From NCBI RefSeq assembly GCF_023055435.1, contig NW_025963779.1, positions 84,134,001-84,198,000 on the forward strand: 64,000 nt of DNA, written 5' to 3'. The first letter of the stretch is position 1. Each line of letters starts with the position of its first letter. The position numbers and the translations under genes are program-made. This document shows, piece after piece, positions 6,076-63,309 of this stretch. The stretch comes from Haliotis rufescens (Eukaryota). The notes beneath the pieces were generated by a model. The model was not told the DNA's origin, searched no databases, and saw only the letters and a list, made by a program, of their open reading frames with translations.

Positions 6076-6464
6076 TATTCTCCAGACAACTTAACAAGAA
6101 CGGACAAATATAAGCAGTTCCAGTCCTTAACTATAAAATGCAGACAAGTTGCATACCAGTGAATGTAGGTCACTGCAGTCGGACCTATGTTAACCTAACA
6201 TGGCAACCTGTCTGGCAAACCAATGGTCGATAGTGAGGGTGTCACTCCAAGCCACAGTCATGGTCATCAATTGGTTCTTTTCCCAAGTACATCCAAGTTG
6301 AAGGAAGTCAACTTGATCTGCTTGGCCACCCCTCAGCCATCAAGGATACCAACGATGACCACGATCATCCCATTTGCCCCAACTCTGTATTGCTGACATG
6401 CAGTTTTCTTACAAGCCCTGGATGGTGATTATGCATTGGGTTTACTTGAGGACAAATGCCACAG

Positions 6465-14613: not shown

Positions 14614-15159
14614 TCACAACCTTTCCACGAAGATAATGTTATCAGATACTCCATTTCCAGAGGCTCCAGCAGCCTTATGACTGTCATGGCGAGTTATCTT
14701 TGTTAGCGTGACTGGTTCCTTTTTCCGCTCTATAGCCCGTTCTCGCATGTTTATACCACTGGTAATAAGATTGCCAAAGCCCTCTTGGTGAGCAAACGCA
14801 TAGCCTGACCGTAGTGACCTTGTGCTTCGACGCATTGTGGATTGTCTTCGCACATGAAGGTCACGTGATCGTGACTTAACCTTCTTGATTCGCTGTCGTA
14901 GCCGCACCCTATCAGCAAGGGATGGAGTAATGTTCGTCTGGTAGAACCGGTAGGCCACGACAGGCACTATGAGCACTGTACAAGTCAGAAGGAGGCTGAA
15001 CCAGAACTGGGCGGAGGAGAACACCTCGAAGGCCACACCCACATATGAGTAGTTGATGCCTTCGGAGTAGAAGGCGAGGATGAAGCAGAAATAGTAGATG
15101 ATGCTGCCCCATACCACGAAGTGGTTGAACCCGGTCCAGTACGAAGTGTCAAGTGCACA
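14614..15159 (-). CDS. ATP8B: ATP8B-like terminal coding exon (last TM helices and regulatory C-tail with GYAFAH)
   Basis: cag acceptor, 546 nt to TGA at 14614-14616. Confidence 0.93.
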   Translation of the reverse strand, partial: CALDTSYWTGFNHFVVWGSIIYYFCFILAFYSEGINYSYVGVAFEVFSSAQFWFSLLLTCTVLIVPVVAYRFYQTNITPSLADRVRLRQRIKKVKSRSRDLHVRRQSTMRRSTRSLRSGYAFAHQEGFGNLITSGINMRERAIERKKEPVTLTKITRHDSHKAAGASGNGVSDNIIFVERL

Positions 15160-45100: not shown

Positions 45101-48100
45101 ATGGTACAGACAAACCAAGGTTCATGGTACAGACAAACCAAGGTACAAGTACTGACAAACCAAGGTTCGTGGTACTGACAAACCAAGGTACAAGTACTGA
45201 CAAAGCAAGGTACATGTACAGACAAACCAAGGTTCATGTACAGACAAACCAAGGTTCATGTACAGACAAACCAAGGTACAAGTACTGACAAACCAAGGTA
45301 CATGTACAGACCAACCAAGGTTCATGTACAGACAAACCAAGGTTCATGTACAGACAAACCAAGGTTCATGTACAGACAAACCAAGGTACAAGTACTGACA
45401 AACCAAGGTACATGTACAGACAAACCAAGGTTCAGATACAGACAAACCAAGGTACAAGTACTGACAAACCAAGGTACATGTACAGACAAACCAAGGTTCG
45501 TGGTACTGACAAACCAAGGTACAAGTACTGACAAACCAAGGTTCATGGTACTGACAAACCAAGGTACATGTACAGACAAACCAAGGTTCATGTACAGACA
45601 AACCAAGGTACATGTACTGACAAACCAAGGTTCATGGTACAGACAAACCATGGTACATGTACAGACAAACCAAGGTTCGTGGTACTGACAAACCAAGGTA
45701 CAAGTACTGACAAACCAAGGTACATGTACAGACAAACCAAGGTTCAGATACAGACAAACCAAGGTACAAGTACTGACAAACCAAGGTACATGTACAGACA
45801 AACCAAGGTTCGTGGTACTGACAAACCAAGGTACAAGTACTGACAAACCAAGGTTCATGGTACTGACAAACCAAGGTACATGTACAGACAAACCAAGGTT
45901 CATGTACAGACAAACCAAGGTACATGTACTGACAAACCAAGGTTCATGGTACAGACAAACCATGGTACATGTACAGACAAACCAAGGTTCGTGGTACTGA
46001 CAAACCAAGGTTCATGTACTGACAAACCAAGGTACATGTACAGACAAACCAAGGTTCATGTACAGACTGACAAACCAAGGTTCATGGTACAGACAAACCA
46101 AGGTTCATGGTACAGACAAACTAAGGTACATGTACAGATAAACCAAGGTACATGTACAGACAAACCAAGGTTCATGTACAGACAAACCAAGGTACATGTA
46201 CAAACAAACCAAGGTACATGTACAGACAAACCAAGGTTCATGTACAGACAAACCAAGGTTCATGTACAGACAAACCAAGGTACATGTACAAACAAACCAA
46301 GGTACATGTACTGACAAACCAAGGTTCTTGTACAGACAAACCAAGGTTCGTGGTACAGACATGATTTTTTCAGATGACAGATTAACTAATGTCATACAAA
46401 AATTTGGTAGTTCCTCAACTTCTCATGATTTGCTCAGTCGTACATATAGAAAAGTATGACATCTTAGTGCTACATTAGTACATTACTGAGACACAAATTG
46501 TGTGCAAATTTGAAAATCAGTAAGAGAAAACAATAACATGCAAATAACATGAAAGCTACAATGTGATTGGTCTTTCTTCATTGTTGTTAAACTCAATGAT
46601 CACTGCAGGACCTGGTGCAGGACCTCAGCATCAAACAATAGCTATTTTAACCTCTGAATAAAATATACTCACAGCAACAAAGTCATTGTTTCTGAGTCGT
46701 ATGATGTCGCCCACAACAACGGTGTGCCATCGTGCCGATACGATTTTGCCATCTCGCAATACATCTGACTTCCTGTTGTTTACCTGTGCATCGCTCCGAT
46801 GACGTTTCTACAGAAGAAAGATCCTACATCAAGAAACTAGAAATGAATGTTACACACAAATTACTGCCAGGAAAGCCATGTCACTTAAGGATATATGATA
46901 AAGAAACTAAAAGCTTTATTGTAATTACAGTCTAGAAATCAATGTTCTTACTCCACAACTTTTTCAAACAGTAATGATAAAATAGAGAAAATAACATTAA
47001 CTCTGTATCAATTAGACACACCGTTATTCATTATTATTATTCATTATTATTATTCATCCATAATATTACAAATTAATGAATGAAATATATGAGTTTTAAT
47101 ATTTTTTAACAGGAAATGGGTCAAGAATGTTCATAATTAATAAATTCTTTCTCAATCCTCAACCAATTTATCAAATAATGTCTTTCTGCTAAGCTTTCAA
47201 GCATTGACTTGGATATCAGAAGGTTGATAGCATAATCCTCACAACTAATTCACATTTAATAATAATCGACATTTTCAATGGCCATCGCTCTGTATCTGAC
47301 AGTGAAAGTCCCACTGTAACGCTGAAACAAGCCTGGGATCTCCGGACGAAGCCAACATCATCCATGTAGTCATTCTATTTGCATATAAATTACACAAACT
47401 GCAAAAACAGGCACCTTCAGACTTTTGGGTAATACAGAGAGCTCAACAAGTTGTACAAGTCGATGCCAACAATGAAAATCAGATTAATGTTTGATACTCA
47501 TTCTTTCCGAGTTTAATTCTTTCCGACATCTGTAAAATTGCGCAGCTACGTTAACATGCAATGTGTCTTTATTGTTTAATTGTGAAACTGCCACACATTT
47601 CTGCGCACATTGCTATCATAGATTTATAGACTGTGTTGATAAAAGATCCTGTCTTGACACAGAGAACAACCATGTATATCCCTACAGACCTCCACTCAAG
47701 CCTCACCATGTATAACCTACAGACCTCCACTCAAGTGGCATTTATGTATATCCCTACACACCTCCACTGAAGTCCCACTTATGTATAACCCTACAGACCT
47801 CTACTCAAGTCCCACTTATGTATAACCCTACAGACCTTCACTCAAGTCCCACTTATGTATAACCCTACAGACCTCCACTCAAGTACCACTTATGTATAAC
47901 CCTACAGACCTTCACTCAAGTCCCACTTATATATAACCCTACAGACCTCCACTAAGTCCCACTTATGTATAACCCTACAGACCTCCACTCAAGTCCCAAA
48001 TATGTATAACCCTACAGACCTCCACTCAAGTACCACTTATGTATAACCCTACACACCTCCACTCAAGTCCCACTTATGTATAACCCTACAGACCTCCACT

Positions 48101-51100
48101 AAGTCCCACTTATGTATAACCCTACAGACCTCCACTAAGTCCCACCTATGTATAACCCTACAGACCTCCACTCAAGTACCACTTATGTATAACCCTACAG
48201 ACCTCCACTCAAGTCCCACTTATGTATAACCCTACAGACCTCCACTAAGTCCCACCTATGTATAACCCTACAGACCTCCACTCAAGTACCACTTATGTAT
48301 AACCCTACAGACCTCCACTCAAGTCCCTTATATGTATAACCCTACAGACCTCCACTAAGTCCCACTTATGTATAACCCTACAGACCTCCACTCAAGTACC
48401 ACTTATGTATTACCTTACAGACCTCCACTCAAATCCCATTTATATATAACCCTACAGACCTCCACTCAAATACCACTTATGTATAACCCTACAGACCTCC
48501 ACTCAAGTCCCACCCAACCGCTTCTATTGAGCTTCAGAGAAATTCTGTTGTTAGCTACCACAGACCAGATATCTCACATGAAACCTGGTCTAAGGACTGA
48601 AGACCAACACTGGAAATAAAAATCTAAACAGAGATCTGATTCTCAGAATCAAAATTAAGTCTCAATGAAATAGGAGCCAACATTCTATTTTCAAAATAAT
48701 CCTCAACTTATATAGTTACTTTTATAAGAACAAAATATATATGACTGTTTTGAACAAGCTTGATTGACAAATGGCATTTACTTTTCTTGCAAAAAGAACT
48801 TGGCATTTTATCTGAGTTCCATGAATCAATATATGAAAATGTGAAATATTACATATTTAAATGAGACAGGTAATGTCAATTAATGATCAGTAAAGACTAC
48901 ACATGTTAGCATGACGTTTTGCAAACAGGTAATATCATCAGTGAAACTATGAAGTAAAGTTACTAGCTGCTACTGTTCCAGGCCTTGTATTGCATGAAGG
49001 AGAGTGCAGTATTTGTATATCAGGCGTATATTGCTTATTGCATGGTCAGCTATAGCCAAAGCATATCATTTAGATAGTGACTTTCAATTGGATAAGGAGG
49101 CTGGTGAGGGGTCATGAGAAAATGGAAGAGTAGATTAACTCTGAAAGTCTCAGCAAATACTGGCACTACTAAGGGACACAACTGTGCATGGTCATTCTTG
49201 ATTAAAGATTCGTTGCCTCAACAGAGCTGAGTGTTCTGTGCTGATAATCCAGTGATTGACATCATAAGCATCGATCCATGTAATTGGGATACTATGGCAA
49301 GCATGGGTTGCTGAAGACCTATTCTACCCTGGATCTTCACAGGTGCAATTTACCATTAAGATAGTTTAAAATCATTATCTAAAACAGTAACTATTAGATA
49401 TAAAAAACAAAAATGGAAATTCATTTGGAAACATCTAAAAATTTACTTAAATTTCACAAATTATGTTGGAAAAATACATATTAAATAATGAACATAATCA
49501 AATAATTATATCCTATTTTCATAAGATTTACAAAACTCCCAAACTTAGTATAATTACTCCATAATGAGTAGAGTAATGTGAAAGACATCCTCACTCCGAC
49601 AACAGGTGACATTGGGCACTTACAAAGTCATCGACAGCATCCTTAATGGCGGTGACTATAAGCACAACGACGAGCGGTATGACCGTGGTGAGGGGAGTGA
49701 GGGACGAGACCACGGGCATCACCTATTGATGTACACAACCCACACTGTATAGCAACTGCCTCTCACCAACACAAGGGAAGCAAAACTTGGTCCGCAGTCG
49801 CAAATTAAGTCTCCTGGCAGGATGAAAGATTTTCAACATGGAAAAGAGAGATGCACACACAGCGAAGCATAAAGCAACTGTCATCTGATCTCAGAAGACT
49901 ATGGGGATGCAGAGCAATTTCACGTACAAAAGATGTACACACGAAAATTGGAAGTGTACAGACAAATATATGTATTCCTGCCTTTTCCAGTGCAGCCATG
50001 TTACCCTGTTCTTGCCCCTACTCCTTTGTTTCTTGATTATCATTTTCAACCATTCTTTTTGAAGCAGGTGTATTTTCCTATGCATGTTTCAATAAGCCAA
50101 ACTTTCAATTCAGACACTGATACATTAATGTGTGGCCAGCGCCAGGCTGTTCTTTAAGCAACATCTCTCTTTTCTAACAAAACAGATTCCCAGCTCCCTT
50201 GAATAAAAAAAAGAATGAAACAAGAAGTTGCCAGGGATAGCCACCATTGTGACATTCTCACTGAAAGCTGTGAAAGATTCCTGCCAGACAATGTTTTCCT
50301 CCATACAGCCTTCTCACTGTCACAGTGCAACGTACACAATCTATTTCCTACTTACACAATTGATTTTTTAAAGATGCTTACAGTGAGTACTGGCAATTGA
50401 TCAAACTGATTTTTTTTAACTGATGGGACTTTCTTTCAGAGATTTGTCTACGTCAAATTGGTGGGACTGTCTTGTTATGCTAATCCTTGTGGTTCAAGGG
50501 ACAGCTTTTAAAAAAAAAAAAGCCTGAAGGTCTGTCATATTGGGTTGGTTGGTTGGTTGGTTGGTTGGTTGGTTTGTTGTTTTACGCCGCACTCAGCAAT
50601 ATTCCAGCTATATGACGTAAATCCTTCTGTAAATAATCGAGTCTGGACCAGACAATCCAGTGATTAATATCAGGAGCATCGATCCACGCAATTGGGATCT
50701 ATGACATGCATCAACCAAGTCAACGAGCCTGACCATCCGATCATGTTAGTCGCCTTTTACGACAAGCATAGTCGCCTTTTACGGCAAGCATGGGTTGATG
50801 AAGACCTATTCTACCCCGGATCTTCACGGGTTATGTCTGTCATATTGGGGCAATGTGGACCTCATATTTTTTTATTTTTTTATGTTTTTGTTTGTTTGTT
50901 TGTTGTTAAATGCTGCACTCAGCAATAATCCATCTGTACGACTGCAGTTTATTAATAATCAAGTCTGGGCCGGACAGTTCAGTGATTGGCACCATGAGCA
51001 ATTGAGCATCATCCAAGTCAGCAAGCCTGAGCACCCGATCCCGTTAGTCACCTCTTACGACAAGCAGGGAAGGCGAATTCTAATCCAGATCTTCATGGGT

Positions 51101-54100
51101 CAAGTCAAGTAATCCAGTAAAGGACTTGGTTCACTTGACTGCAGTATTGTACTGCACCAACAGCTTGAATTGGCTCTCCCACATCTCCCCTACCCTGGGT
51201 AGAAGAGCATGCATAGGCCAGAATGGGGCGTGTAATGTTGTTCATTATATGACGAACAGCGGGGCCTGGAGTTGGGGTCATGGTGTTTGTGGTATGACTG
51301 GCAATGGGGCCTGGAGTTGGGGTCATGGTGTTTGTGGTATGACTGGCAATGGGGCCTGGAGTTGGGGGTCATGGTGTTTGTGGTATGACTGGCAATGGGG
51401 CCTGGAGTTGGAGGTCATGGTGTTTGTGGTATGACTGGCAATGGGGCCTGGAGTTGGGGTCATGGTGTTTGTGCTATGACTGGCAATGGGGCCTGGAGTT
51501 GGAGGTCATGGTGTTTGTGGTATGACTGGCATTAGGGTCTGTCACATGGGGCCATGGTGTTCATGGTATGACTGGCAATGGGCCTGTTATTTTGGCCATG
51601 GTGTTCATGGTATGACTGGCAATGGGCCTGTTATTTTGGCCATGGTGTTCATGGTATGACTGGCAATGGGCCTGTTATTTTGGCCATGGTATTCATGGTA
51701 TGACTGGCAATGGGCCTGGAGTTGGGGCCATGGTATGACTGGCAATGGGCCTGTTATTTTGGCCATGGCTTTTCATGGTATGACTGGCAATGGGCCTGGA
51801 GTTGGGGCCATGGTCTTCATGGTATGACTGGCAATGGGCCTGTTATTTTGGCCATGGTGTTCATGGTATGACTGGCAATGGGCCTGGAGTTGGGGCCATG
51901 GTGTTCATGGTATGACTGGCAATGGGCCTGGAGTTGGGGCCATGGTCTTCATGGTATGACTGGCAATGGGCCTGTTATTGGGGCCATGGTCTTCGTGGTA
52001 TGACTGCCAATGGGCCTGGAGTTGGGGCCAAGTTGGTCCTTATATGACTGGCAAATCAACTAACGCCATGAAGAAACTAGGCTTCTAGGAGAATGATGGC
52101 AATGTGCCATGTGTTATGAAAGATTGAATGTCAGCATCTCTAGAAGACTAGTCACAATGGTAGCTATATGGCACAATGACACACAGTGGATTTGACCCAC
52201 TTGTTGTTAAAGCATGAAACTTCGCTGAAAGAGATGCTGTCAAAGAATTAATTAGCAATCCCAACAAAAGATCAAATTCATGTCTCACCCTTCTTCTCAT
52301 CTTTTATACAAGATGAGTTGTGTGCACATGGTACATCTAAACATGGGTCTACTAAACCTGTTAAATCTAATGTGGTAACTTTATAGAGGTTCATTATCCA
52401 TGAAAAAAGACCTTAAACCTGGAACTCTTTAAATCCATATTTGGAACAAAGTTCTTTAGATACTATTATCAGACAATATGCCTGATAATAAAAGCAAATA
52501 AAAAAATTCAACGCAATTGTTCCAGTGAATGGCAGATTGTTGATTTTACAAAAGTATATGTTTCAAAGTGCACACTGAAGGTTTACTGAACTCTGTGTTT
52601 GTGGTTGCATGTTTACAAACACACTGATTGTTCCACTACAACAACAGAACCGAGACATGATTTTTTTTATTGGGACATAAACACAAAAAAACAAAACCAT
52701 AGCATAACTCCCTCATGCTCCTGTGCATGATGCAACTCGGGAAAGGACGAGCTGTCGTCATCTCAACAAAATGGTGTGATCCAAAGCAAAACTTTCCCCC
52801 AGAATCAAATTCCAGGACATGATGTATAGGTCTGACACATGGTCATGCAACTTGGCATCATCTGAACATCATTCCATAACCTAAAAATAGAATATTAAAT
52901 GAATAATTGATTCTCAATATAACAGAGTGTAAACAGACACCAGTTTTTGAGATTGGCAAAATGAATCCATCAAAATAACTCAAGGTGGACTGGGTATATG
53001 ACAGATGCAAGCAAAGCACGAAGGACATATTATAATATTGCAGGCTCCAAGTGCAGTAGCAGGTTATAAGCAGTGCAGGGGAGCTGGCGATGGTCAAGCC
53101 CAACCATGTGTGACTTACGAAATCATCGATTGCATCCTTGATGGCCGACACCGTGAGCACGAACACCAATGGAATGATGGTGGTCACAGGACTAAGTGAT
53201 GTTACAGCTGGAATAAACTATTAAAGGCAACATGGTAAACATTGGCACATGCTGGTTCATACAAGCATTGGCACATGCTGGTTCATACAAAGATTGGCAC
53301 ACAATCGTTCATAAAGACATTGGTACACACTGGTTCATACAAACATTGGTACAAACTGGTTCATACAAACATTGGTACACACTGGTTCATACAAACATTT
53401 GCACATGCTGGTTCATACAAACATTGGCACACACTGGTTCATACAAACATTGGCACACACTGGTTCATACAAAGATTGGCACACAATCGTTCTTAAAGAC
53501 ATTGGTACACACAGGTTCATACAAACATTGGTACACACTGGTTCATACAAACATCGGCACACACTGGATCATACAAACATTGGCACACACTGGATCATAC
53601 AAACACTGTCACACACTGGATCATACAAACACTGTCACACACTGGTTCATACAAACACTGGCACACGCTGGATCATACAAACATTGGCATACACTGATTC
53701 ATAAAAACACTGGCACACACTGGATCATAAAAACACTGGCACACACTGGATCATACAAACACTGGCACACACTGGTTCATACAAACATTGGAACACACTG
53801 GTTCATACAAACATTGTCACACACTGGATCATACAAACATTGGCACATGCTGGTTCATACAAACATTGGCACACACTGGTTCATACAAACACTGGCACAC
53901 ACTGGTTCATACAAACATTGTCACACACTGGATCATACAAACATTGGCACAGACTGGTTCATACAAACACTGGCACACTGGTTCATACAAACATTGTCAC
54001 ACACTGATTCATAAAAACATTGGCACACACTGGATCATACAAACATTGTTACACACTGGAACATACAAACACTGTCACACACTGGTTCATACAAACACTG

Positions 54101-57100
54101 GCACACGCTGGATCATACAAACATTGGCATACACTGATTCATAAAAACACTGTCACACACTGATTCATAAAAACATTGGCACAGGCTGGATCATACAAAC
54201 ACTGGCACACGCTGGATCATACAAACATTGGTACACACTTGTTCATACAAACATTGGTACACGCTGGTTCATACAAACATTGGTACACACTGGTTCATAC
54301 AAACATTGGCACACACTGGATCATACAAACATTGGCACACACTGGATCATACAAACATTGGCACACACTGGATCATAAAAACACTGGCACACACTGGATC
54401 ATACAAACACTGGCACACACTGGTTCATACAAACATTGGCACACACTGGTTCATACAAACACTGGCACACACTGGTTCATACAAACATTGGCACACACTG
54501 GATCATACAAACATTGGCACAGACTGGTTCATACGAACACTGGCACACTGGTTCATACAAACATTGTCACACACTGGATGATACAAAACATTGTCACACA
54601 CTGATTCATAAAAACATTGTCACACACTGGATCATACAAACATTGTTACACACTGGATCATACAAACACTGGCACACACTGGTTCATACAAACATTGGCA
54701 TACACTGATTCATAAAAACATTGTCACCCACTGATTCATAAAAACATTGTTACACACTGGATCATACAAACACTGGCACACACTGGTTCATACAAACATT
54801 GGCATACACTGATTCATAAAAACATTGTCACCCACTGATTCATAAAAACATTGGCACACACTGGATCATAAAAACACTGGCATACACTGATTCATAAAAA
54901 CATTGTCACCCACTGATTCATAAAAACATTGTTACACACTGGATCATACAAACACTGGCACACACTGGTTCATACAAACATTGGCATACACTGATTCATA
55001 AAAACATTGTCACCCACTGATTCATAAAAACATTGGCACACACTGGATCATAAAAACACTGGCACACGCTGGATCATACAAACATTGGCACACACTTGTT
55101 CATACAAACATTGTCACACACCGGTTCATACAAACACTGGCACACACTGATTCATAAAAACATTGGCACACACTGATTCATAAAAACATTGGCACACACT
55201 GATTCATAAAAACAGAGCTACTGAAAAACAAAATATTAGTGACCTGGTTCCATGTACAAGCATACTGATTGGGTGAACATGCTGCAGTGGCATAATCACT
55301 TGTTAATAACATGCAGAAGATGCAGTGGTTTGAGTCCAGGATAACATAGTATATCACAATAACCTAAAATTTGTTATCAGACCAGTCAATCCAGTGGTTG
55401 ATAGCGTGTGGGTCTGGACCAGACAAGCCTGTGGTTGACAGCGTGTGGGTCTGGACCAGACAAGCCTGTGGTTGACAGCGTGTGGGTCTAAACCAGACAA
55501 GCCTGTGGTTGATAGTGTGTGGGTCTGAACCAGACAAGCCTGTGGTTGATAGTGTGTGGGTCTGAACCAGACAAGCCTGTGGTTGACAGCGTGTGGGTCT
55601 GGACCAGACAAGCCTGTGGTTGACAGCGTCTGGGTCTGGACCAGACAAGCCTGTGGTTGATAGTGTGTGGGTCTAAACCAGACAAGCCTGTGGTTGACAG
55701 CGTGTGGGTCTAAACCAGACAAGCCTGTGGTTGATAGTGTGTGGGTCTGAACCAGACAAGCCTGTGGTTGATAGTGTGTGGGTCTGAACCAGACAAGCCT
55801 GTGGTTGACAGCGTGTGGGTCTGGACCAGACAAGCCTGTGGTTGACAGCGTCTGGGTCTGGACCAGACAAGCCTGTGGTTGATAGTGTGTGGGTCTGGAC
55901 CAGACAAGCCTGTGGTTGACAGCGTGTGGGTCTAAACCAGACAAGCCTGTGGTTGATAGTGTGTGGGTCTGAACCAGACAAGCCTGTGGTTGATAGTGTG
56001 TGGGTCTGGACCAGACAAGCCTGTGGTTGACAGCGTGTGGGTCTAAACCAGACAAGCCTGTGGTTGATAGTGTGTGGGTCTGAACCAGACAAGCCTGTGG
56101 TTGATAGTGTGTGGGTCTGAACCAGACAAGCCTGTGGTTGACAGCGTGTGGGTCTGGACCAGACAAGCCTGTGGTTGACAGCGTCTGGGTCTGGACCAGA
56201 CAAGCCTGTGGTTGATAGTGTGTGGGTCTGGACCAGACAAGCCTGTGGTTGACAGCGTGTGGGTCTAAACCAGACAAGCCTGTGGTTGATAGTGTGTGGG
56301 TCTGAACCAGACAAGCCTGTGGTTGACAGCGTGTGGGTCTAAACCAGACAAGCCTGTGGTTGATAGTGTGTGGGTCTGAACCAGACAAGCCTGTGGTTGA
56401 CAGCGTGTGGGTCTGAACCAGACAAGCCTGTGGTCGACAGCATGTGGGTCTGGACCAGACAAGCCTGTGGTTGACAGCGTGTGGGTCTAAACCAGACAAG
56501 CCTGTGGTTGACAGCATCTGGGTCTGGACCAGACAAGCCTGTGGTTGACAGCATCTGGGTCTGGACCAGACAAGCCTGTGGTTGATAGTGTGTGGGTCTG
56601 AACCAGACAAGCCTGTGGTTGACAGCGTGTGGGTCTGGACCAGATAACCAGTGGTTGATAGTGGGTGCCCAATCACCTCCAAACTTGGCTCACAAGCTGG
56701 TCTGGGTACCCAATCACTTCCAAGCCTGGCTCACCAGCTGGTCTGGGTACTCCATCACTTCCAAACATGGCTCACCAGCTGGTCTGGGTACCCCATCACT
56801 TCCAAACATGGCTCACCAGCTGGTCTGGGTACCCAATCACTTCCAAGCCTGGCTCACCAGCTGGTCTGGGTACCCCATCACTTCCAAACATGGCTCACCA
56901 GCTGGTCTGGGTACCCCATCACTTCCAAACATGGCTCACCAACTGGTCTGGGTACCCAAGCACCTCCAAGCCTGGCTCACCAGTTCTTCTTTAGCTCAGT
57001 GAGAAGACAAGACCAGGTTAGTAGTTCCTTTGGTAAGTCACTGACACAATACTGCTATCAGACAGAACGTGCTGCAACAAGAACATGCAAGACAAAGACA

Positions 57101-60100
57101 TGTGCATGTGCATCTGAGTATTACGTTTCATCGATGAATGTCCTTGTGAGCAAATTACATCAGTCTCTCATGAAGGAAAGGGACTTCAACAACAACTCAC
57201 AACAGGCAAGCCATTGGTTCTTCCCCTATCGTCCTTGTTTCATAATTATATCCTGAGCAAGGCAATATAATGTTAGTCTGAACAAAATGCATTACAATCA
57301 TACAATGGATTACAGACAGAACAAAGAGACGAGAACTGTGTGACATACAAAAGAGAAATATTATGACTTAGAAATCAATGCCAGCATTTGTTGATATAAC
57401 ATGACAAAGCCAGGCTTTGATTTCAAGGTAATTGATTCTCAGTTGAGGAAAATGTCATGTCTCTGGCTAAAGTGTGCAGATACAACAATGCTGTGGCCGA
57501 CATCAAAGGAGAGACGTGAAAATGCCAGTTCTGTTTACGACAACCCTACAGCCCAGCGTTGCGCCGGCAGATAGGGAACACGGCCATGTTGGTATACCCC
57601 CTCTATCTGCTACATGTACTGATACAGTGGTACAATGTTGTACCATGATACAGATCACATTTATTATGTGGCTCAAACAGCCTAGTCGGAGAGAGTGAAT
57701 AATTAAACAATAACAGACATATCATGGTAGTTTGTACATAGACAAGTATGCGCCAATGGTTCACAGCTTGAGCAACGATGAGTCTCAGGTACGGTGAGTC
57801 AGGTCACATGGTGACCCTCTGATCCTCATCTTAGTCGGCTCACATCACAATGGGGTTTGGTGGATCTGTTCTGCCCTGGAATCCCCACAGGGAAACAAGC
57901 ATGGGGTACTGGGGACCTATTTTGCCCTGGAATCCCCACAGGGAGACAATCATAGGGGTTGGGTGGATCTATTCTGCCCTTGAATCCCCACAGGGAGACA
58001 AGATTGGGGTCTGGGGACCTATTCTGCCCTGGAATCCCCACAGGGAGACACAGATTGGGTTCTTGGGACCTATTCTGAACTGGAATCACAACAGGGAGAA
58101 AAGCATGGCGTACTGGGGACCTATTCTCCCCTGGAAACCCCTTTGGGAAATAAGCATGGGGTCTGGGAACCTATTCTGACCTGGAATCCCCACAGGTAGA
58201 CAAGGATGGAGGTCTAGGCCTGGAATCCCCACAGGGAGACACAGGATTGGGTTCTGGGGACCTATTCTGGCCTGGAATTCCCATAAGAAGACACACATAG
58301 GGTTCTGGAGACCAAATTCTGCCCTGGAATCCCCACAGGGAGACAAGCATGGGGTACTGGAGATCTACTCTACCCTGGAATCCGCACAGGGAGACAAGCA
58401 TAGGGGTCCGGGGACCTATTCTGACCTGGCATCCTCACAGGGAGACACGCATGGGTGTCTAGGGACCTATTCTGGCCTGGAACCCCCACAGGGAGACACA
58501 GATTGGGTTCTGGGGACCTATTCTGGCCTGGAACCCCCACAGGGAGACAAGCATGGGATACTGGGGACTTATTCTACCCTGGAATCCCCACAGGAAGACA
58601 AGCATGGGATACTGGGAACTTATTCTACCCTGGAGTAAGTGAGTAAGTGAGTGAGTATGGTTTTACGCCGCTTTTAGCAATATTCCAGCAATATCACGGC
58701 GGGGGACACCAGAAATGGGCTCCACACATTGTACCCATGTCGGGCGTGACGAGCGAACGCTTTAACCACTAGGCTACCCGACCGCCCCTATTCTACCCTG
58801 GAATCTACACAGGAAGACACAAACTGGGTTCAGGGGACTTATTCTACCCTGGAATCTACACAGGAGGAATAAGGAAGAAAATAAAATAATTCATCATTAC
58901 AGGTCTAATGCACCATATGCAATTTCTTGTAAATTTTGTAGTTCACCAAATGAAAAACTTTTTCTGAAGAGCAATCTTGACATATGGTGTATCATGATAA
59001 AACACATGTATCTCTATATCACACACCCTACTTCCCCTAACACAACATCACAAGAAACAGATGTCTCCCGGAACAAGCTCACAAGGCAGTGATGAATGTG
59101 CAGTGGCTGGTGATATCTGATATCAACCAGGAAAATCAACTTAATTAATACACTACTCCTCTAAACACTGGAAAAAAAAGAAACTTATAAATTAGACATC
59201 TTAATGTACAGCAAAACCCAGCAGACTGAGAATCCTTGGGACAATTAAAAATATATACCACTAAAAAAACAGCTAAGGACCGTGGGTCCTTAACATTTTT
59301 TTAATAGTATATATGGAAGTAGCTGTAGCTTCAACAAGAGAGCTGAAAGAGAATCATACATTTCATTAAGTTGTCATTAATGAGGTTCCATGTCATGAAA
59401 AGTAACAAATGTCAATATACATGTATGCAATTGGCTCATCTTTCAAACAATATATCATATACTGCAAAATATTCATAAATTATAAACAGAAGAGTTCAAT
59501 TTATATAATTATTTGAAATGCAATATTTTACTTTAATATCCCTATGCTTTTGTGTCTTGTTTTGTTTGTTGTTTGACGCCATACTCAGCAGTATTCCAGC
59601 CATATGATGGGGGCCTTTATATGATCAAGTCAGTACCAGACATTCAATTGGTTGATATTGCGAACACCGTCTTGATACGATAACATGCCATCAACCAAGT
59701 CATTGAGCCTGACCACCCGATCCACTTAGCAGCCTCTTACAGGTGAATATCATGATGTGACATTTCCAGGCACACAATCTTGAGCAGCATCTGATAGTTG
59801 TTACAATGTGCTCCACATTACACCTGAAGTTGTCATGTAATGTCCATCCATGAAGCTTAATGTCATGTAATGTCCATCCATGAAGCTCAATGTCATGTAA
59901 TGTCCATCCATGAAGCTCAATGTCATGTTATGTCCATCCGTGAAGCTCAATGTCATGTAATGTCCATCCATGAAGCTCAATGTCATGTAATGTCCATCCA
60001 TGAAGCTCAATGTCATGTAATGTCCATCCATGATGCTCAATGTCATGTAATGTCCATCCATGAAGCTCAATGCCATGTAATGTCCATCCATGATGCTCAA

Positions 60101-60979
60101 TGTCATGTAATGTCCATCCATGAAGCTCAATGTCTTGTAATGTCCATCCATGAAGCACAATGTCATGTAATGTCCATCCATGAAGCTCAATGTCATGTAA
60201 TGTCCATCCATGAAGCTCAATGTCATGTTATGTCCATCCATGAAGCTCAATGCCACGTTATGTCCATCCATGAAGCTCAATGCCACGTAATGTCCATCCA
60301 TGAAGCTCAATGCCATGTAATGTCATCAATATTAAATCACAACTGTTACCAAATCTCGTCTGATCATTGTTCCATCCGGGTGCACGGGTGGCCCAGTTGT
60401 CTAAGGCGTCACGATTCACTGTGCAGAGTTGCATCCCTTGGGCATGCTGAAACCTATGATTGTGGGTTCGAATCCCAGTTCGCCCTGATTATGTTTCTTG
60501 GTTTGTCAGCACCATACCCATGCTTGTGGGTTTCACCGTCTGAGACCTGCAACACTTCAGGCTTTCCTCCTACATTAAGCTGACATGCCGTGATATAACT
60601 GGAATAATGTCAAAAGCGGTGTTAAACCTAACTCATTCACTCATTGTTCCATCCAACCTGACTTGGTGTGGATGGTAAGTGGCGCTGTATGTAACAACTG
60701 GTGACAATGTCTTGGTGTGAATGGTCAAACGGTGCTGTATGTAACAACTGGTGACAATGTCTTGGTGTGAATGGTCAAACGGCGCTGTATATAACAACTG
60801 GTGACAATGTCTTGGTGTGAATGGTCAAATGGTGCTGTATGTGACAACTGGTGACAACATCTTACCTGCATGATAAGCAGACCCAGGAAGTAGGCGTTGG
60901 CCAGGCGCTGGAACTGCTCGAACAGGTTCTTGGGCAGGAATGTAAGCACATTGTACTTGGACGTGGAAATGTAGTTGTT
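14614..60979 (-). CDS. ATP8B: P4-ATPase phospholipid flippase, ATP8B class (spliced gene span; 5' end not found in window)
   Basis: 21 GT-AG exons join in phase to give 3510 nt. Motifs: TSKY, ETAELDGETNLK (A domain), PISLYVS (TM4), DKTGTLT (phosphorylation site), KGAD, LTGDK, GDGAND, and the C-terminal [13 protein letters not shown] typical of ATP8 flippases. The exact vertebrate paralog cannot be assigned. Confidence 0.96.
15462..15731 (-). mobile_element. SINE-like family C, full length
   Basis: TSD CCCAAGGCAACA on both sides. Confidence 0.9.
15746..15965 (-). mobile_element. SINE family B, degenerate
   Basis: Reverse-complement similarity to the family B body and tail. Confidence 0.7.
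16043..16288 (-). CDS. ATP8B: ATP8B-like exon: [17 protein letters not shown]...VVAVNVR
   Basis: cag/gtagga, 246 nt. Confidence 0.95.
16412..16697 (-). mobile_element. SINE family B, full length
   Basis: Reverse complement of the 513-772 family. Confidence 0.9.
17005..17182 (-). mobile_element. SINE family A
   Basis: Similar to 35298-35486. Confidence 0.85.
17250..17333 (-). CDS. ATP8B: ATP8B-like exon: [28 protein letters not shown]
   Basis: cag/gtaagt, 84 nt. Confidence 0.95.
17508..17731 (-). CDS. ATP8B: ATP8B-like exon: [12 protein letters not shown]...HGRWSY...FFYKN...GFSAQ
   Basis: cag/gtgagt, 224 nt, phase 1/0. Confidence 0.95.
18189..18372 (-). CDS. ATP8B: ATP8B-like exon: AYALKPELE...[10 protein letters not shown]...[11 protein letters not shown]
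   Basis: cag/gtatgt, 184 nt, phase 0/1. Confidence 0.95.
18354..19963. repeat. 70-bp tandem array (23 copies) containing a splice acceptor and exon start
   Basis: Exact 70-nt period from 18361 to 19901. Confidence 0.97.
20085..20400 (-). mobile_element. 5S rRNA-derived (SINE3-like) element with CORE-like body; 3' fragment also at about 37772-37900
   Basis: Minus strand of 20344-20386 reads GTTAAGCAACGTCGGTCACGGAGAGTCCTTGGACGGGTGACCG, resembling the 5S internal control region; the body contains CCTTCGGCAAGTGACTT...GAATGGGTACC. Confidence 0.65.
20495..20609. mobile_element. Palindromic MITE (about 115 bp)
   Basis: TIR CCTGGGCCCACTTGCACAAA.CGATCTT.GCGCTAAGA; second copy at 42363. Confidence 0.85.
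20806..21071 (-). CDS. ATP8B: ATP8B-like exon: [10 protein letters not shown]...AVVINGHSL
   Basis: cag/gtaagg, 266 nt, phase 1/0. Confidence 0.95.
21195..21373 (-). CDS. ATP8B: ATP8B-like exon: TTLDNR...[14 protein letters not shown]...WVLTGDKQ
   Basis: cag/gtatgt, 179 nt, phase 2/1. Confidence 0.95.
21440..21545. repeat. Short tandem repeat of about 21 bp (CCCAGGATTTTATATGATATC)
   Basis: Direct inspection. Confidence 0.75.
22389..22765. other. Assembly gap (N run)
   Basis: Ns. Confidence 1.
22775..22872 (-). CDS. ATP8B: ATP8B-like exon: [32 protein letters not shown]
   Basis: cag/gtgagg, 98 nt, phase 0/2; GLRTL motif. Confidence 0.94.
23125..24600. repeat. Complex minisatellite with GACGAGGTACCA core and variable (CA)n spacers
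   Basis: Direct inspection. Confidence 0.93.
24699..24818 (-). CDS. ATP8B: ATP8B-like exon: [24 protein letters not shown]...HLN
   Basis: cag/gtgagt, 120 nt; KGAD motif. Confidence 0.95.
24994..25095 (-). CDS. ATP8B: ATP8B-like exon: [34 protein letters not shown]
   Basis: tag/gtaaga, 102 nt, phase 0/0. Confidence 0.95.
25597..25820. repeat. 46-bp tandem repeat (about 4.5 copies) overlapping a splice donor
   Basis: Unit CATCCCCTAGTTGGCTACAGCTGTATTTACCTGACCCCCTGCTACA. Confidence 0.93.
25821..25900 (-). CDS. ATP8B: ATP8B-like exon: [26 protein letters not shown]
   Basis: cag/gtaagt, 80 nt, phase 1/0. Confidence 0.95.
26630..26795 (-). CDS. ATP8B: ATP8B-like exon: [21 protein letters not shown]...[14 protein letters not shown]
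   Basis: cag/gtaggt, 166 nt, phase 0/1. Confidence 0.93.
26893..27045 (-). mobile_element. SINE family A, degenerate
   Basis: Weak but colinear similarity to family A. Confidence 0.55.
27423..27800. mobile_element. Second copy of the same inverted-repeat DNA element (opposite end plus interior)
   Basis: Similarity to 1-345 as described for that feature. Confidence 0.6.
27852..27941 (-). CDS. ATP8B: ATP8B-like exon: [30 protein letters not shown]
   Basis: cag/gtgtgt, 90 nt, phase 0/0. Confidence 0.93.
28270..28375 (-). mobile_element. SINE-like family C fragment
   Basis: Matches the 3' half of family C. Confidence 0.75.
28484..28924 (-). mobile_element. SINE family D (tRNA head, Meta-like central domain, (CCTCA)n tail), interrupted by an N gap
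   Basis: B-box GGTTCGATCCC followed by CATACCAAAAGAC...ATGGTAC; near-identical to 43535-43880. Confidence 0.85.
28534..28667. other. Assembly gap (N run)
   Basis: Ns. Confidence 1.
29130..29292 (-). CDS. ATP8B: ATP8B-like exon: VEIIRL...[19 protein letters not shown]
   Basis: cag/gtgtgt, 163 nt, phase 2/0; DKTGT phosphorylation site. Confidence 0.96.
29424..34566. repeat. 34-bp tandem array (about 150 copies, 5.1 kb) containing an exon end and splice donor
   Basis: Unit GGGGACACACTACTCACCTGACATACAGGGAGAT. Confidence 0.98.
34547..34758 (-). CDS. ATP8B: ATP8B-like exon (TM3-TM4): IFLFLL...[11 protein letters not shown](S)
   Basis: cag/gtgagt, 212 nt, phase 0/2; PISL motif. Confidence 0.95.
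34812..36950. repeat. 22-bp minisatellite (GGTCCCTGCTTAAAGTGTTATA), split by a SINE
   Basis: Direct inspection. Confidence 0.95.
35298..35486 (-). mobile_element. SINE family A inserted into the 22-bp satellite
   Basis: Intact A and B boxes, long (GAGT)n tail, flanked by satellite-derived duplication CACAG(T/C)GTTACAG. Confidence 0.92.
37106..37471. mobile_element. Tc1/mariner-type MITE
   Basis: 24-bp TIR CCGTATTCGACGTAATAAGCGCCC / GGGCGCTTATTACGTCAAATAAGG with TA on both sides. Confidence 0.85.
37943..38165 (+). mobile_element. SINE-like family C, 5'-truncated
   Basis: TSD GCAAGCATG; AAAC tail. Confidence 0.88.
38221..38468 (-). CDS. ATP8B: ATP8B-like exon: EIICEAPN...[11 protein letters not shown]...MNILIVG
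   Basis: cag/gtgagt, 248 nt, phase 1/0. Confidence 0.95.
39780..40036 (-). mobile_element. SINE-like family C
   Basis: Matches family consensus. Confidence 0.88.
40269..40351 (-). CDS. ATP8B: ATP8B-like exon: [27 protein letters not shown]
   Basis: cag/gtcagt, 83 nt, phase 2/1; completes the DGET motif. Confidence 0.94.
41094..41284 (+). mobile_element. SINE family A
   Basis: B-box GGTTCGATTCC, (ACTC)n tail, TSD TAGATGTA(G/A)TT. Confidence 0.92.
41295..41550 (-). mobile_element. SINE-like family C
   Basis: Matches family consensus. Confidence 0.88.
41769..41839 (-). CDS. ATP8B: ATP8B-like exon: [24 protein letters not shown]
   Basis: cag/gtaag, 71 nt, phase 0/2. Confidence 0.95.
42363..42477. 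mobile_element. Palindromic MITE, same family, opposite orientation
   Basis: Long TIRs; interior is the reverse complement of that in 20495-20609. Confidence 0.85.
43185..43395. repeat. Degenerate triplication of about 70-85 bp
   Basis: GGAGCTG(C/T)AAGGGATTAT...GACATAT occurs three times. Confidence 0.75.
43535..43880 (-). mobile_element. SINE family D, full length
   Basis: Same structure as 28484-28924; a 3' fragment also lies at about 38900-38975. Confidence 0.88.
44654..46361. repeat. 22-23-bp minisatellite (ACTGACAAACCAAGGTTCATG(G)T) with a higher-order block of about 312 bp
   Basis: Direct inspection; repeated 104-aa block in ORF 45322-46008. Confidence 0.95.
46673..46807 (-). CDS. 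ATP8B: ATP8B-like exon: [12 protein letters not shown]...[15 protein letters not shown]
   Basis: tag/gtgagt, 135 nt, phase 0/0. Confidence 0.95.
47670..48513. repeat. 37-bp minisatellite
   Basis: Unit CCACTTATGTATAACCCTACAGACCTCCACTCAAGTC. Confidence 0.95.
49243..49344 (-). mobile_element. SINE-like family C, internally deleted fragment
   Basis: Head joined to part of the body. Confidence 0.7.
49624..49722 (-). CDS. ATP8B: ATP8B-like alternative exon B (TM1-2 loop and TM2): [33 protein letters not shown]
   Basis: tag acceptor, gtaagt donor, 99 nt, phase 0/0; read manually, absent from the ORF track. Confidence 0.92.
50543..50831 (-). mobile_element. SINE-like family C, full length with (AACC)n tail
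   Basis: Best-preserved copy in the window. Confidence 0.92.
50888..51101 (-). mobile_element. SINE-like family C, older copy
   Basis: Degenerate colinear similarity. Confidence 0.75.
51260..52053. repeat. 44-45-bp minisatellite between the two alternative exons
   Basis: Core GGTATGACTGGCAATGGG. Confidence 0.93.
53119..53217 (-). CDS. ATP8B: ATP8B-like alternative exon A (TM1-2 loop and TM2): [33 protein letters not shown]
   Basis: tag acceptor, gtaagt donor, 99 nt, phase 0/0; paralogous to 49624-49722. Confidence 0.92.
53235..55213. repeat. 26-bp minisatellite ending about 15 nt before the acceptor of alternative exon A
   Basis: Unit ACAAACATTGGCACACACTGGTTCAT. Confidence 0.95.
55379..56662. 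repeat. 37-bp minisatellite derived from the family C body
   Basis: Unit GGGTCTGGACCAGACAAGCCTGTGGTTGACAGCGTGT. Confidence 0.95.
56663..56983. repeat. 41-bp minisatellite
   Basis: Unit GCTGGTCTGGGTACCCCATCACTTCCAAACATGGCTCACCA. Confidence 0.93.
57848..58865. repeat. Degenerate minisatellite of about 51-53 bp derived from the family C head
   Basis: Unit GGGGACCTATTCTGCCCTGGAATCCCCACAGGGAGACAAGCATGGGGTACT. Confidence 0.9.
58637..58788 (-). mobile_element. SINE family A with internal deletion removing the B-box, inside a minisatellite
   Basis: Colinear with 35298-35486 except for a deletion of about 20 nt; flanked by TATTCTACCCTGGA. Confidence 0.88.
59555..59742 (-). mobile_element. SINE-like family C, degenerate
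   Basis: Degenerate colinear similarity. Confidence 0.7.
59831..60325. repeat. 30-bp minisatellite, about 16 copies
   Basis: Unit TGTCATGTAATGTCCATCCATGAAGCTCAA. Confidence 0.95.
60378..60640 (+). mobile_element. SINE family B, full length
   Basis: 14-bp TSD TCATTGTTCCATCC (60364-60377 and 60641-60654). Confidence 0.9.
60663..60863. repeat. 50-bp tandem repeat (about 4 copies) abutting a splice donor
   Basis: Unit GGTGTGAATGGTCAAACGGTGCTGTATGTAACAACTGGTGACAATGTCTT. Confidence 0.92.
60866..60979 (-). CDS. ATP8B: ATP8B-like exon (TM1): [38 protein letters not shown]
   Basis: cag acceptor, gtaag donor, 114 nt, phase 0/0. Confidence 0.95.
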
Positions 60980-63159: not shown

Positions 63160-63309
63160 TTTGTCTGTCTGTTTGTTGTTTAACGCCACACTGAGCAATA
63201 TTCCAGCTATATGATGGCGGTCTGTAAGTAATCGAGTTAATCCAGTGATTGACATCATGAGCATCGATCCACGCAATTGGGATCGATGACATGCATCAAC
63301 CAAGTCAGC
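63160..63309 (-). mobile_element. SINE-like family C, 3' part
   Basis: Matches the 3' half of family C. Confidence 0.8.

What the first reader, a model, noticed from the sequence alone, without database searches (positions are those of the whole stretch)
49624..53217. Duplicated, probably mutually exclusive exons swap the lipid entry gate (TM1-2 loop and TM2) of a P4-ATPase
Seen: two 99-nt, phase-0, stop-free exons with tag/gtaagt borders encode [33 protein letters not shown] and [33 protein letters not shown]. They are 22/33 identical, differ conservatively and show many synonymous changes, which points to an old duplication with both copies under selection. Known: the end of TM1 and the TM1-TM2 loop form the substrate entry gate of P4-ATPases; the QQ of Drs2/ATP8A versus GA of Dnf1 lies here. 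The first codon of each alternative exon is the second position of that motif (Q-F vs Q-V), and 6 of the 11 differences fall in the first 11 residues. Inference: including both would add an extra helix and invert downstream topology, so they should be mutually exclusive, giving a splice-controlled switch of lipid specificity or CDC50 interaction. They are 3.4 kb apart and both preserve frame, so neither steric exclusion nor NMD explains exclusivity; an RNA-pairing or protein-regulated mechanism is implied.
Basis: partly seen in the sequence, partly recalled or inferred. Interest (0 to 1): 0.85.

Follow-up and report, generated by a model that had tools for sequence, protein, structure and literature searches.

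The report
Alternative TM2 exons in abalone flippase
An abalone lipid-flippase gene (ATP8B-like) has two old duplicate copies of the exon for its second membrane helix, and public gene models splice in one or the other, so one gene makes two flippases that differ only along the lipid pathway; this is conserved across molluscs, already in RefSeq, and not found in any paper I searched.

Summary
Two 99-nt, phase-0 exons lie on the minus strand at 53119-53217 (A) and 49624-49722 (B). Both have AG/GTAAGT borders. They share 22/33 residues and 64/99 bases. No third copy exists in the window or the 1.33-Gb genome.

The gene is an ATP8B-like P4-ATPase of Haliotis rufescens; RefSeq isoform X2 maps at 100% over the clean exon matches. 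RefSeq isoforms X1 (B) and X2 (A) differ only in this segment. The same pair is annotated in two more Haliotis species, seven other gastropod species, seven bivalve species and two octopus species. A nemertean has four versions and Dreissena three. Arthropod isoforms sampled show one version each.

Synonymous sites between A and B are saturated (pS 0.83, dN 0.20). Three positions separate the two types in every gastropod sampled.

The segment runs from the residue after the TM1 entry-gate Gln through TM2 to the exit-gate end. The A type tends toward PS-flippase-like residues and the B type toward PC-flippase-like residues. A functional switch is inferred, not shown.

How one exon is chosen is unresolved. 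Steric, frame-shift/NMD and U12 explanations fail, and no RNA pairing stands out.

Verdict: a real, conserved feature; a new member of a known kind.

The parts
60866..60979 (-). Upstream constitutive exon (residues 32-69 of RefSeq isoform X2). It encodes the PhoLip_ATPase_N motif and TM1 and ends with the entry-gate Gln (..LIMQ). Donor CAG|GTAAGA.
   Evidence: PF16209, E 7.9e-19; 100% match to P0271 residues 32-69.
53119..53217 (-). Alternative exon A (the 'first' type): 33 codons, phase 0-0. It encodes the last TM1 residue, the exoplasmic TM1-2 loop and TM2. Carries F at position 19 and S at position 24. Used in RefSeq isoform X2.
   Evidence: (P0271 carries exactly this peptide).
49624..49722 (-). 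Alternative exon B (the 'second' type): 33 codons, phase 0-0, same segment of the protein. Carries V at position 19 and T at position 24. Used in RefSeq isoform X1. Its acceptor has the weakest polypyrimidine tract of 19 acceptors in the gene.
   Evidence: (P0167, P0168 and P0172 carry it 33/33).
46673..46807 (-). Downstream constitutive exon (residues 103-147), the start of the TM2-to-A-domain linker (KRHRSD..).
   Evidence: 100% match.
53218..60865 (-). Intron between the upstream exon and exon A (7648 nt). Mostly tandem arrays; only 2595 of 7648 nt are non-repeat.
53237..55214 (.). 26-nt tandem array, 76 copies, ending about 20 nt upstream of exon A's acceptor. Its RNA-sense unit contains GUGUGUG. 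A role in splicing is unknown.
49723..53118 (-). Intron between exons A and B (3396 nt), with ordinary U2-type GTAAGT...AG ends. Far too long for steric exclusion.
46808..49623 (-). Intron between exon B and the downstream exon (2816 nt).

Best explanation
These are two anciently duplicated alternative exons of the Haliotis rufescens ATP8B-like phospholipid flippase gene.

Annotated: each H. rufescens RefSeq model carries one of them (X2 = A, X1 = B). The two proteins are both 1200 residues long and differ at only 11 positions, all within residues 70-99. This stretch is the residue after the TM1 entry-gate Gln, the short exoplasmic TM1-2 loop, and the whole of TM2 down to its cytosolic exit-gate end.

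Shown: both versions have been kept under purifying selection since before the gastropod radiation. Equivalent alternative versions of the same exon exist in bivalves, cephalopods and a nemertean.

Inferred: TM2 lines the TM2-4-6 lipid groove and moves with TM1 during the pump cycle. Swapping it therefore most likely tunes the lipid pathway, meaning head-group preference or transport kinetics. The A type leans toward PS-flippase-like residues (F19, S24, often E28). The B type keeps the PC-flippase-like T24 and D28.

Inferred: the choice between A and B is probably set by trans-acting splicing regulators acting on weak TAG acceptors, especially that of B. The position and phase of the exons cannot enforce it.
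For: Exons and homology.

Gene identity: Pfam PF16209, PF16212 and PF00122 on single exons. DKTGT, PISL and GDGAND are found in the window itself; DGET spans an exon junction and is seen only in the matching RefSeq protein. The clean exon matches are 100% identical to RefSeq P0271, and lower values occur only where the alignment runs past an exon end or across a short intron.

Isoforms: H. rufescens X1 and X2 differ only at residues 70-99. Equal-length pairs are also annotated in H. cracherodii, H. asinina, Gigantopelta, Patella, Littorina, Pomacea, Biomphalaria, Physella, Crassostrea, two Saccostrea species, Mytilus, Mya, Mercenaria, Dreissena (3 versions), two Octopus species and Lineus (4 versions). 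Where one model holds both versions, the A-type position comes first.

Selection and age: pS 0.83 (saturated) against dN 0.20. Across Haliotis species exon B is 33/33 and exon A 30/33 conserved, against 95% for the whole protein. Positions 2, 4 and 19 are fixed-different between types in 10 first-type and 9 second-type sequences from 12 gastropod species. Gastropod first-type exons group together with cephalopod first-type exons nested inside, support 87/77. A Haliotis-only duplication is rejected at p-AU 0.04.

Placement: residues 2-32 align with human ATP8B1 133-163, residues 9-32 with Dnf1 239-262, and residues 2-32 with Drs2 239-269. ATP8A1 and Drs2 read A/S-A-x-K-E where ATP8B1 and C. thermophilum Dnf1 read T-A-I-K-D.

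Literature: TM1-4 segment swaps between Drs2 and Dnf1 change substrate discrimination, and TM2 forms part of the entry site, the hydrophobic gate and the exit gate (PMC12424579; PMC5732287; PMC11460456). A TM2 exit-site point mutation lets the PS flippases ATP11A, ATP11C and ATP8A2 flip PC (PMC11536178).

Weak acceptor: exon B has a pyrimidine fraction of 0.45, the lowest of 19 acceptors, and both alternative exons use ..AATAG.
Against: No read-level RNA evidence was obtained. The only usable runs covered intronic repeats and gave zero depth on both exons, so the inclusion pattern rests on RefSeq models.

RefSeq also lists both-in and both-out isoforms in several other molluscs, so exclusivity may be incomplete.

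The PS-like versus PC-like contrast is only partial. Haliotis exon A has D, not E, at position 28. Heterobranch B-type exons have S at position 24. Drs2 has V, not F, at position 19.

The role of Dnf1 T254 and D258 as specificity positions is recalled from memory. The source paper could not be opened.

The 33-column tree cannot date the duplication beyond gastropods: a gastropod-only origin has p-AU 0.14.
Confidence: 0.8

Rival explanations
1. Two real, conserved alternative exons whose proteins are biochemically equivalent. The duplicate would be kept because each copy has its own splicing or expression control (regulatory subfunctionalisation), not because the flippase behaves differently.
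For: Most differences are conservative (I/V/L/M, S/T). The catalytic and head-group-binding motifs outside this exon are shared by both isoforms. No assay exists.
Against: Type-specific residues have stayed fixed across all five major gastropod lineages: positions 2, 4 and 19, with F against A/V at 19. This is hard to explain without a type-specific protein function. The segment also lies on the lipid pathway, where single substitutions change specificity (PMC11536178; PMC12424579).
Confidence: 0.25
2. The two exons are independent cassette exons rather than a mutually exclusive pair. Both-in and both-out transcripts would then be common, and many products would be non-functional.
For: RefSeq lists both-in isoforms (Pomacea X1 and X2, C. 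virginica X1) and both-out isoforms (Pomacea X6, C. virginica X4, Patella X3, S. cucullata X3, M. edulis X3). Nothing in length, phase or spacing forbids them.
Against: The three Haliotis annotations contain only one-or-the-other isoforms. Both-in adds a whole hydrophobic helix and both-out removes TM2; either would invert the downstream topology. Some both-in proteins are ab initio 'hypothetical protein' models (Littorina P0190, Dreissena P0342, Pinctada P0161).
Confidence: 0.1
3. One of the two exons is a decaying or essentially unused duplicate that the annotation pipeline picked up from rare reads.
For: No reads were seen here on either exon. Exon A changes faster than B within Haliotis: 3 replacements against 0.
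Against: Both exons are open, with intact AG/GTAAGT sites. Synonymous sites are saturated while dN is 0.20. Each type is recognisable across gastropod orders that split hundreds of millions of years ago.
Confidence: 0.03
4. Exclusivity is enforced by competing long-range RNA pairing (a docking site and selector sequences), as in insect Dscam, 14-3-3zeta or Mhc.
For: Helices of 12 bp or more exist between the three introns. One 16-bp helix joins 49759-49774 (just upstream of B) to 47631-47646. One 12-bp helix joins A's polypyrimidine tract (53224-53235) to 49996-50007. The count is 35, against 21 +/- 5 in shuffles.
Against: The best energy (-20.5 kcal/mol) is reached in 12 of 30 shuffles. No single site pairs with two selector-like partners. 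A and B share no intronic similarity beyond 5-6 nt at the splice sites. There are no long inverted repeats.
Confidence: 0.15

Closest known systems
Tandem-duplicated mutually exclusive exons that swap a membrane segment in channels and transporters (for example Nav exon 5N/5A, CaV1.2 exon 8/8a, NCX1 exons A/B; recalled from general knowledge, not checked here)
   Same: Two homologous exons of equal length and phase lie next to each other between the same constitutive exons. One is included per transcript, and the product differs in one membrane-embedded element.
   Different: The protein here is a P4-ATPase lipid flippase, and the element swapped is the TM1-2 loop plus TM2 of the lipid groove. 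Four full-text searches found no paper describing this for any P4-ATPase.
Laboratory TM-segment swaps and point mutants between Drs2 (PS) and Dnf1 (PC/GlcCer), and exit-site mutants of ATP11A, ATP11C and ATP8A2
   Same: The same region is exchanged or mutated. TM1-4 swaps change substrate discrimination (PMC12424579). A TM2 exit-site mutation (ATP11A E114G) adds PC flipping (PMC11536178). Exon positions 24 and 28 align with Dnf1 T254 and D258, and exon position 31 aligns with ATP11C E109, the equivalent of ATP11A E114.
   Different: Those are engineered or pathogenic variants. Here the swap is natural, splice-controlled and conserved. Position 31 is D in both exons, so that particular exit-site residue is not the variable one.
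Known P4-ATPase splice isoforms (C. elegans tat-1 C-terminal isoforms; mammalian ATP11C C-terminal variants, the latter recalled from memory)
   Same: Alternative splicing of a flippase gene gives isoforms with the same catalytic core.
   Different: Those isoforms differ in the cytosolic C-terminal regulatory or sorting tail (tat-1: bioRxiv 10.1101/2024.09.15.613099), not in the membrane domain.
Docking-site/selector clusters of arthropods (Dscam, 14-3-3zeta, Mhc; recalled from general knowledge)
   Same: A cluster of homologous alternative exons. The number of versions varies between lineages: 2 here, 3 in Dreissena, 4 in Lineus.
   Different: No significant competing RNA pairing was found. 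The arthropod ATP8B orthologues sampled show only one version of this exon.

Membership tests
P4-ATPase (phospholipid flippase), ATP8B-like (class 1b) | N-terminal and C-terminal P4-ATPase domains (Pfam PF16209, PF16212) | tested here: met
   PF16209 at E 7.9e-19 on exon 60866-60979. PF16212 at E 1.7e-28 and 2.4e-14 on exons at 17400-17810 and 14617-15168.
P4-ATPase (phospholipid flippase), ATP8B-like (class 1b) | P-type catalytic motifs DKTGT, DGET and GDGAND, and the P4-specific PISL motif in TM4 | tested here: met
   DKTGT at 29133-29153, GDGAND at 18205-18222, PISL at 34552-34569. DGET is at residue 170 of P0271 and spans an exon junction, so it is seen only in that RefSeq protein.
P4-ATPase (phospholipid flippase), ATP8B-like (class 1b) | Orthology to ATP8B rather than the ATP8A, ATP9, ATP10 or ATP11 classes | tested here: met
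   all close relatives are named phospholipid-transporting ATPase ID / IM / 8B; the best solved match for the exon is human ATP8B1; separate ATP8A-, ATP10- and ATP11-like paralogues exist elsewhere in the genome. No class-wide tree was built.
P4-ATPase (phospholipid flippase), ATP8B-like (class 1b) | Lipid flipping activity and dependence on a CDC50 beta subunit | not testable with these tools
   Needs expression and a lipid uptake or ATPase assay.
Tandem-duplicated mutually exclusive exons | Homologous exons of equal length and phase, adjacent between the same two constitutive exons | tested here: met
   99 nt each, phase 0-0, 22/33 identical, both between exons 60866-60979 and 46673-46807.
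Tandem-duplicated mutually exclusive exons | Each mature transcript contains exactly one of them | tested here: inconclusive
   RefSeq models in three Haliotis species contain one or the other and never both or neither. No reads covered the exons in the runs available. Both-in and both-out models exist in other molluscs.
Tandem-duplicated mutually exclusive exons | Both copies conserved in relatives | tested here: met
   both types are present in all five major gastropod lineages sampled. Equivalent pairs occur in bivalves and cephalopods.
Known mechanisms of mutual exclusion | Steric hindrance (intron too short), frame shift with NMD, or U2/U12 incompatibility | tested here: not met
   The intron between A and B is 3396 nt. 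Both exons are 33 codons, so both-in and both-out stay in frame. All donors are GTAAG-type and all acceptors are AG.
Known mechanisms of mutual exclusion | Competing docking/selector RNA pairing | tested here: inconclusive
   no helix stands above shuffled controls. Conservation could not be tested because orthologous introns could not be fetched.

The most novel reading that the evidence does not exclude
One ATP8B-like gene would encode, through an exon choice at least as old as gastropods, two flippases with different lipid head-group preference. The B form would be PC-type (T24, D28, small residue at position 19). The A form would be shifted toward aminophospholipids or another substrate (S24, often E28, F19). 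Molluscan tissues could then retune membrane asymmetry by splicing alone.

A further possibility: the bivalve first-type exon groups with the vertebrate ATP8B version. The exon pair may therefore predate molluscs, with different lineages keeping different copies.
Probability: 0.25. Interest if true: 0.75.

Novelty: new member of a known kind. Interest (0 to 1): 0.55.

Why it matters
Which residues set lipid specificity in P4-ATPases, and how a lipid passes from the entry site to the exit site, are still debated (PMC12424579). Most evidence comes from engineered chimeras and disease mutations.

Here evolution has kept two versions of the whole TM1-2 loop plus TM2 inside one otherwise identical protein, probably for several hundred million years. 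They differ at only 11 positions in Haliotis, and three positions are fixed-different across gastropods.

That gives a small, ready-made set of substitutions to test: position 19 (F against A/V), position 24 (S against T) and position 28 (E against D).

It also shows that a membrane-domain switch by alternative splicing exists in flippases, where the splice isoforms noted in this report change the C-terminal tail. The variable copy number (2, 3 or 4 versions) in molluscs and a nemertean makes the exon a useful case for how such clusters grow.

Tried and rejected
RNA reads:
- The look-up of sequencing runs on window 11501-21500 returned mostly DNA-like holders, three possible RNA contig sets and three miRNA runs.
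- Read laying on 47300-53299 with X22, X23, X24 and X19 covered only intronic SINE-like repeats (49240-49344, 50536-51067). Depth was zero on both exons. This is uninformative, not evidence of silence.

- Orthologous loci, exon order at DNA level in relatives, cross-species dN/dS and intron footprinting could therefore not be done.

Splicing-factor motifs:
- RBFOX-type GCAUG motifs in the array upstream of exon A: only 4 in 2 kb and no UGCAUG. Rejected.

RNA pairing and repeats:
- Docking/selector search: no signal above shuffles.
- No long inverted repeats.
- The SINE copies flanking exon B are in direct, not inverted, orientation.

Third copy of the exon:
- None in the window or the genome.
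- A weak similarity at 6333-6374 is out of order and in mixed frames. Judged to be chance.

Literature:
- Four searches for mutually exclusive exons in P4-ATPases, flippases, ATP8B or ATP8A1 found nothing relevant.
- The Baldridge and Graham papers could not be opened or found by search. The statement about Dnf1 T254A and D258E therefore rests on memory.

Tree:
- A single clade of all first-position exons (gastropod, cephalopod and bivalve) is disfavoured, p-AU 0.027.
- These groups were named after seeing the data, and only 33 columns exist.

Joined model:
- Exons were searched one by one by reference. Full-length comparisons used public protein ids only.

Masked stretches:
- The N stretches at 22389-22765 and 28534-28667 were left untouched.

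Full report
**Observation**

On the minus strand, 53119-53217 (exon A) and 49624-49722 (exon B) are each 99 nt and open in frame 1. Each is preceded by ..AATAG and followed by GTAAGT. They share 22 of 33 residues and 64 of 99 bases. Sixteen codons differ only synonymously and eleven change the residue.

The upstream exon ends at 60866 with ..LIMQ, followed by GTAAGA. The downstream exon begins at 46807 with KRHRSD...

A finds B at E 2.9e-12 in a tblastn of the window; the next hit has E 0.4. DNA similarity stops 5-6 nt outside the exon on each side. The whole 1.33-Gb assembly holds only these two close copies, plus single homologous exons in three other P4-ATPase paralogues.

**What the gene is**

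Single exons match Pfam PhoLip_ATPase_N, E1-E2_ATPase and PhoLip_ATPase_C. DKTGT, PISL and GDGAND are found in the window; DGET spans an exon junction and is seen only in the matching RefSeq protein.

A search with the last exon, followed by a search with a molluscan hit, returned a family that NCBI names phospholipid-transporting ATPase ID / IM / 8B.

RefSeq isoform X2 of Haliotis rufescens (P0271) maps onto the window at 100% over the clean exon matches. Lower values occur only where the alignment runs past an exon end or across a short intron. Its residues 1-31 lie upstream of the mapped part. The window is therefore H. rufescens, or the same assembly.

Exons were searched by reference, and full-length work used public protein ids.

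**Are the exons alternative?**

The 90% cluster around the Haliotis proteins holds the following models:
- H. rufescens X1 and X2
- H. cracherodii X1 and X2
- H. asinina X1 and X2
- one H. rubra model

Within each species the two isoforms have the same length. In H. rufescens they differ only at 11 positions, all between residues 70 and 99. X2 carries exon A exactly and X1 carries exon B exactly. No Haliotis model has both or neither.

As far as I know, NCBI's pipeline proposes alternative isoforms from transcript alignments, but I could not see that evidence.

My own attempt at reads failed. The runs on offer were DNA-like, tiny contig sets or miRNA libraries. On 47300-53299 they covered only SINE-like intronic repeats and gave no depth on either exon. 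Mutual exclusion in Haliotis is therefore supported at annotation level only.

**Conservation**

Equal-length isoform pairs that differ only in this 33-residue segment are annotated in these taxa:
- Gastropods: Gigantopelta, Patella, Littorina, Pomacea, Biomphalaria, Physella
- Bivalves: Crassostrea virginica, Saccostrea echinata and S. cucullata, Mytilus, Mya, Mercenaria, and Dreissena with three versions
- Cephalopods: Octopus sinensis and O. bimaculoides
- Nemertean: Lineus longissimus, with four versions

Models that contain both versions in tandem put the A-position version first and the ..TPLTT.. version second, as in the window. These are Littorina P0190, Pomacea X1, C. virginica X1, Dreissena P0342, Pinctada P0161 and Argonauta X1.

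Lingula, Tubulanus and Owenia show one version among the isoforms listed. All sampled isoforms in ten arthropod clusters also show one version per species.

Some species also have both-in or both-out RefSeq isoforms, so the choice may be leaky.

**Age and selection**

Between A and B the synonymous difference is 0.83 per site, which is saturated. dN is 0.20.

Across Haliotis species exon B is identical and exon A differs at three N-terminal positions. The whole protein is 95% identical between H. rufescens and H. asinina.

I compared ten first-type and nine second-type sequences from twelve gastropod species:
- Positions 2 (I against M/L/V), 4 (A against V) and 19 (F against A/V) never overlap between types.
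- Position 24 is always S in the first type.
- E at position 28 occurs only in the first type.

In a 33-column tree, gastropod first-type exons group together with cephalopod first-type exons nested inside, support 87/77.

AU tests gave these results:

| Hypothesis | p-AU | Reading |
|---|---|---|
| Haliotis-only duplication | 0.04 | rejected |
| Gastropod-only origin | 0.14 | not rejected |
| Single clade of all first-position exons, including bivalves | 0.027 | disfavoured |

Bivalve first-type exons (..PWYTT.. or ..PFYTT..) group with the vertebrate ATP8B version instead.

The firm conclusion is that the pair predates crown gastropods. Anything older remains open.

**Where the segment sits**

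| Solved or reference protein | Exon residues | Protein residues |
|---|---|---|
| Human ATP8B1 | 2-32 | 133-163 |
| Yeast Dnf1 | 9-32 | 239-262 |
| Yeast Drs2 | 2-32 | 239-269 |

Positions 24 and 28 are Dnf1 T254 and D258. Position 31 aligns with ATP11C E109 and ATP8A1 E119, the equivalents of ATP11A E114.

At positions 24-28 the known proteins read as follows:
- PS flippases ATP8A1 and Drs2: A/S-A-x-K-E
- The abalone's own ATP8A-like paralogue: SAIKE
- ATP8B1 and C. thermophilum Dnf1: TAIKD

The gastropod first type is usually SAIKE and the second type TAIKD. In Haliotis they are SAIKD and TAIKD.

Reviews and primary papers place TM2 in the entry site, the hydrophobic gate and the exit gate. 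They show that TM1-4 swaps, or single exit-site changes, alter substrate choice (PMC12424579; PMC5732287; PMC11460456; PMC11536178).

From memory, Dnf1 T254A and D258E were among the exit-gate changes that allow PS recognition. I could not open that paper.

**Most likely working**

Shown:
- Two homologous, intact exons.
- Either/or public isoforms that differ in nothing else.
- Long-term constraint on both exons, with type-specific residues.
- A location on the lipid pathway.

Inferred:
- The swap changes how the flippase handles lipid (head-group preference or transport rate), rather than its folding or catalysis.
- I put about 0.4-0.5 on some biochemical difference. I put about 0.25 on a true head-group switch.

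**How one exon is chosen**

- The intron between the exons is 3396 nt, so steric hindrance is out.
- Both-in and both-out forms stay in frame, so NMD is out.
- All splice sites are U2-type.
- Both alternative exons use ..AATAG acceptors.
- Exon B has the poorest polypyrimidine tract of 19 acceptors in the gene, 0.45. This fits factor-dependent recognition.
- A search for intron-intron helices found 35 of 12 bp or more, against 21 +/- 5 in shuffles. The best energy was matched in 12 of 30 shuffles, and no site had two selector-like partners.
- There are no long inverted repeats. The SINE copies around exon B are in direct orientation.
- GCAUG is not enriched in the 26-nt array that abuts exon A.

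The mechanism stays open. I favour trans-acting regulation at about 0.5 and RNA pairing at about 0.15.

**Comparison with what is known, and novelty**

The closest known kind is the tandem-duplicated mutually exclusive exon that swaps a membrane segment in channels and exchangers. The closest functional analogue is the laboratory Drs2/Dnf1 TM-segment chimera.

Known flippase splice isoforms change the C-terminal tail (tat-1).

Four full-text searches found no description of such an exon pair in a P4-ATPase. The isoforms themselves are, however, already in RefSeq.

I rate it a new member of a known kind. It is real and conserved, of moderate to good interest to flippase and splicing researchers, and directly testable.

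Noticed in passing
window 53237-55214: A 26-nt tandem array of 76 copies ends about 20 nt upstream of exon A's acceptor. Its RNA-sense unit contains GUGUGUG. Much of the 14 kb between the constitutive exons (46808-60865) is tandem arrays; in the intron upstream of exon A only 2595 of 7648 nt are non-repeat.
   Followed up: partly
window 49243-49344, 50561-50831, 50887-51066; also 2723-2981, 15462-15730, 37940-38171, 39782-40037, 41295-41548, 63171-63307: A SINE-like repeat of about 270 nt has many copies in the window. It is the only thing the contig sets X22-X24 covered, at summed depths in the thousands. The copies on either side of exon B are in direct orientation.
   Followed up: partly
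proteins P0319, P0322, P0323, P0324 (Lineus longissimus); P0155, P0343, P0340 (Dreissena polymorpha): The same 33-residue segment exists in four versions in a nemertean and three in the zebra mussel. The exon has therefore been duplicated repeatedly.
   Followed up: partly
proteins P0278, P0292, P0156, P0153 compared with P0098: The bivalve first-position version (..PWYTT.. or ..PFYTT..) groups with the vertebrate ATP8B version (..AWYTT..) on a branch with 90/93 support in the 33-column tree. It does not group with the gastropod and cephalopod first-position versions. This could be convergence or an older shared origin.
   Followed up: partly
G000:C583:54556366-54556461 (L004), G000:C412:2049233-2049310 (L003), G000:C583:46928347-46928442 (L005): ATP8A-like, ATP11-like and ATP10-like paralogues each showed a single match to this segment in the genome-wide six-frame search. 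The ATP8A-like one reads SAIKE at positions 24-28, like the gastropod first-type exon, and its coding match ends at the same point, followed by GT.
   Followed up: partly
window 29424-34566: The intron after the PISL exon holds about 150 tandem copies of the exon end coding VPISLY. This is the array already noted by the scan as s1-814395.
   Followed up: no
window 6333-6374 (+): A weak, out-of-order similarity to exon A (nucleotide E 0.015; peptide fragments in two frames). Judged to be chance.
   Followed up: partly
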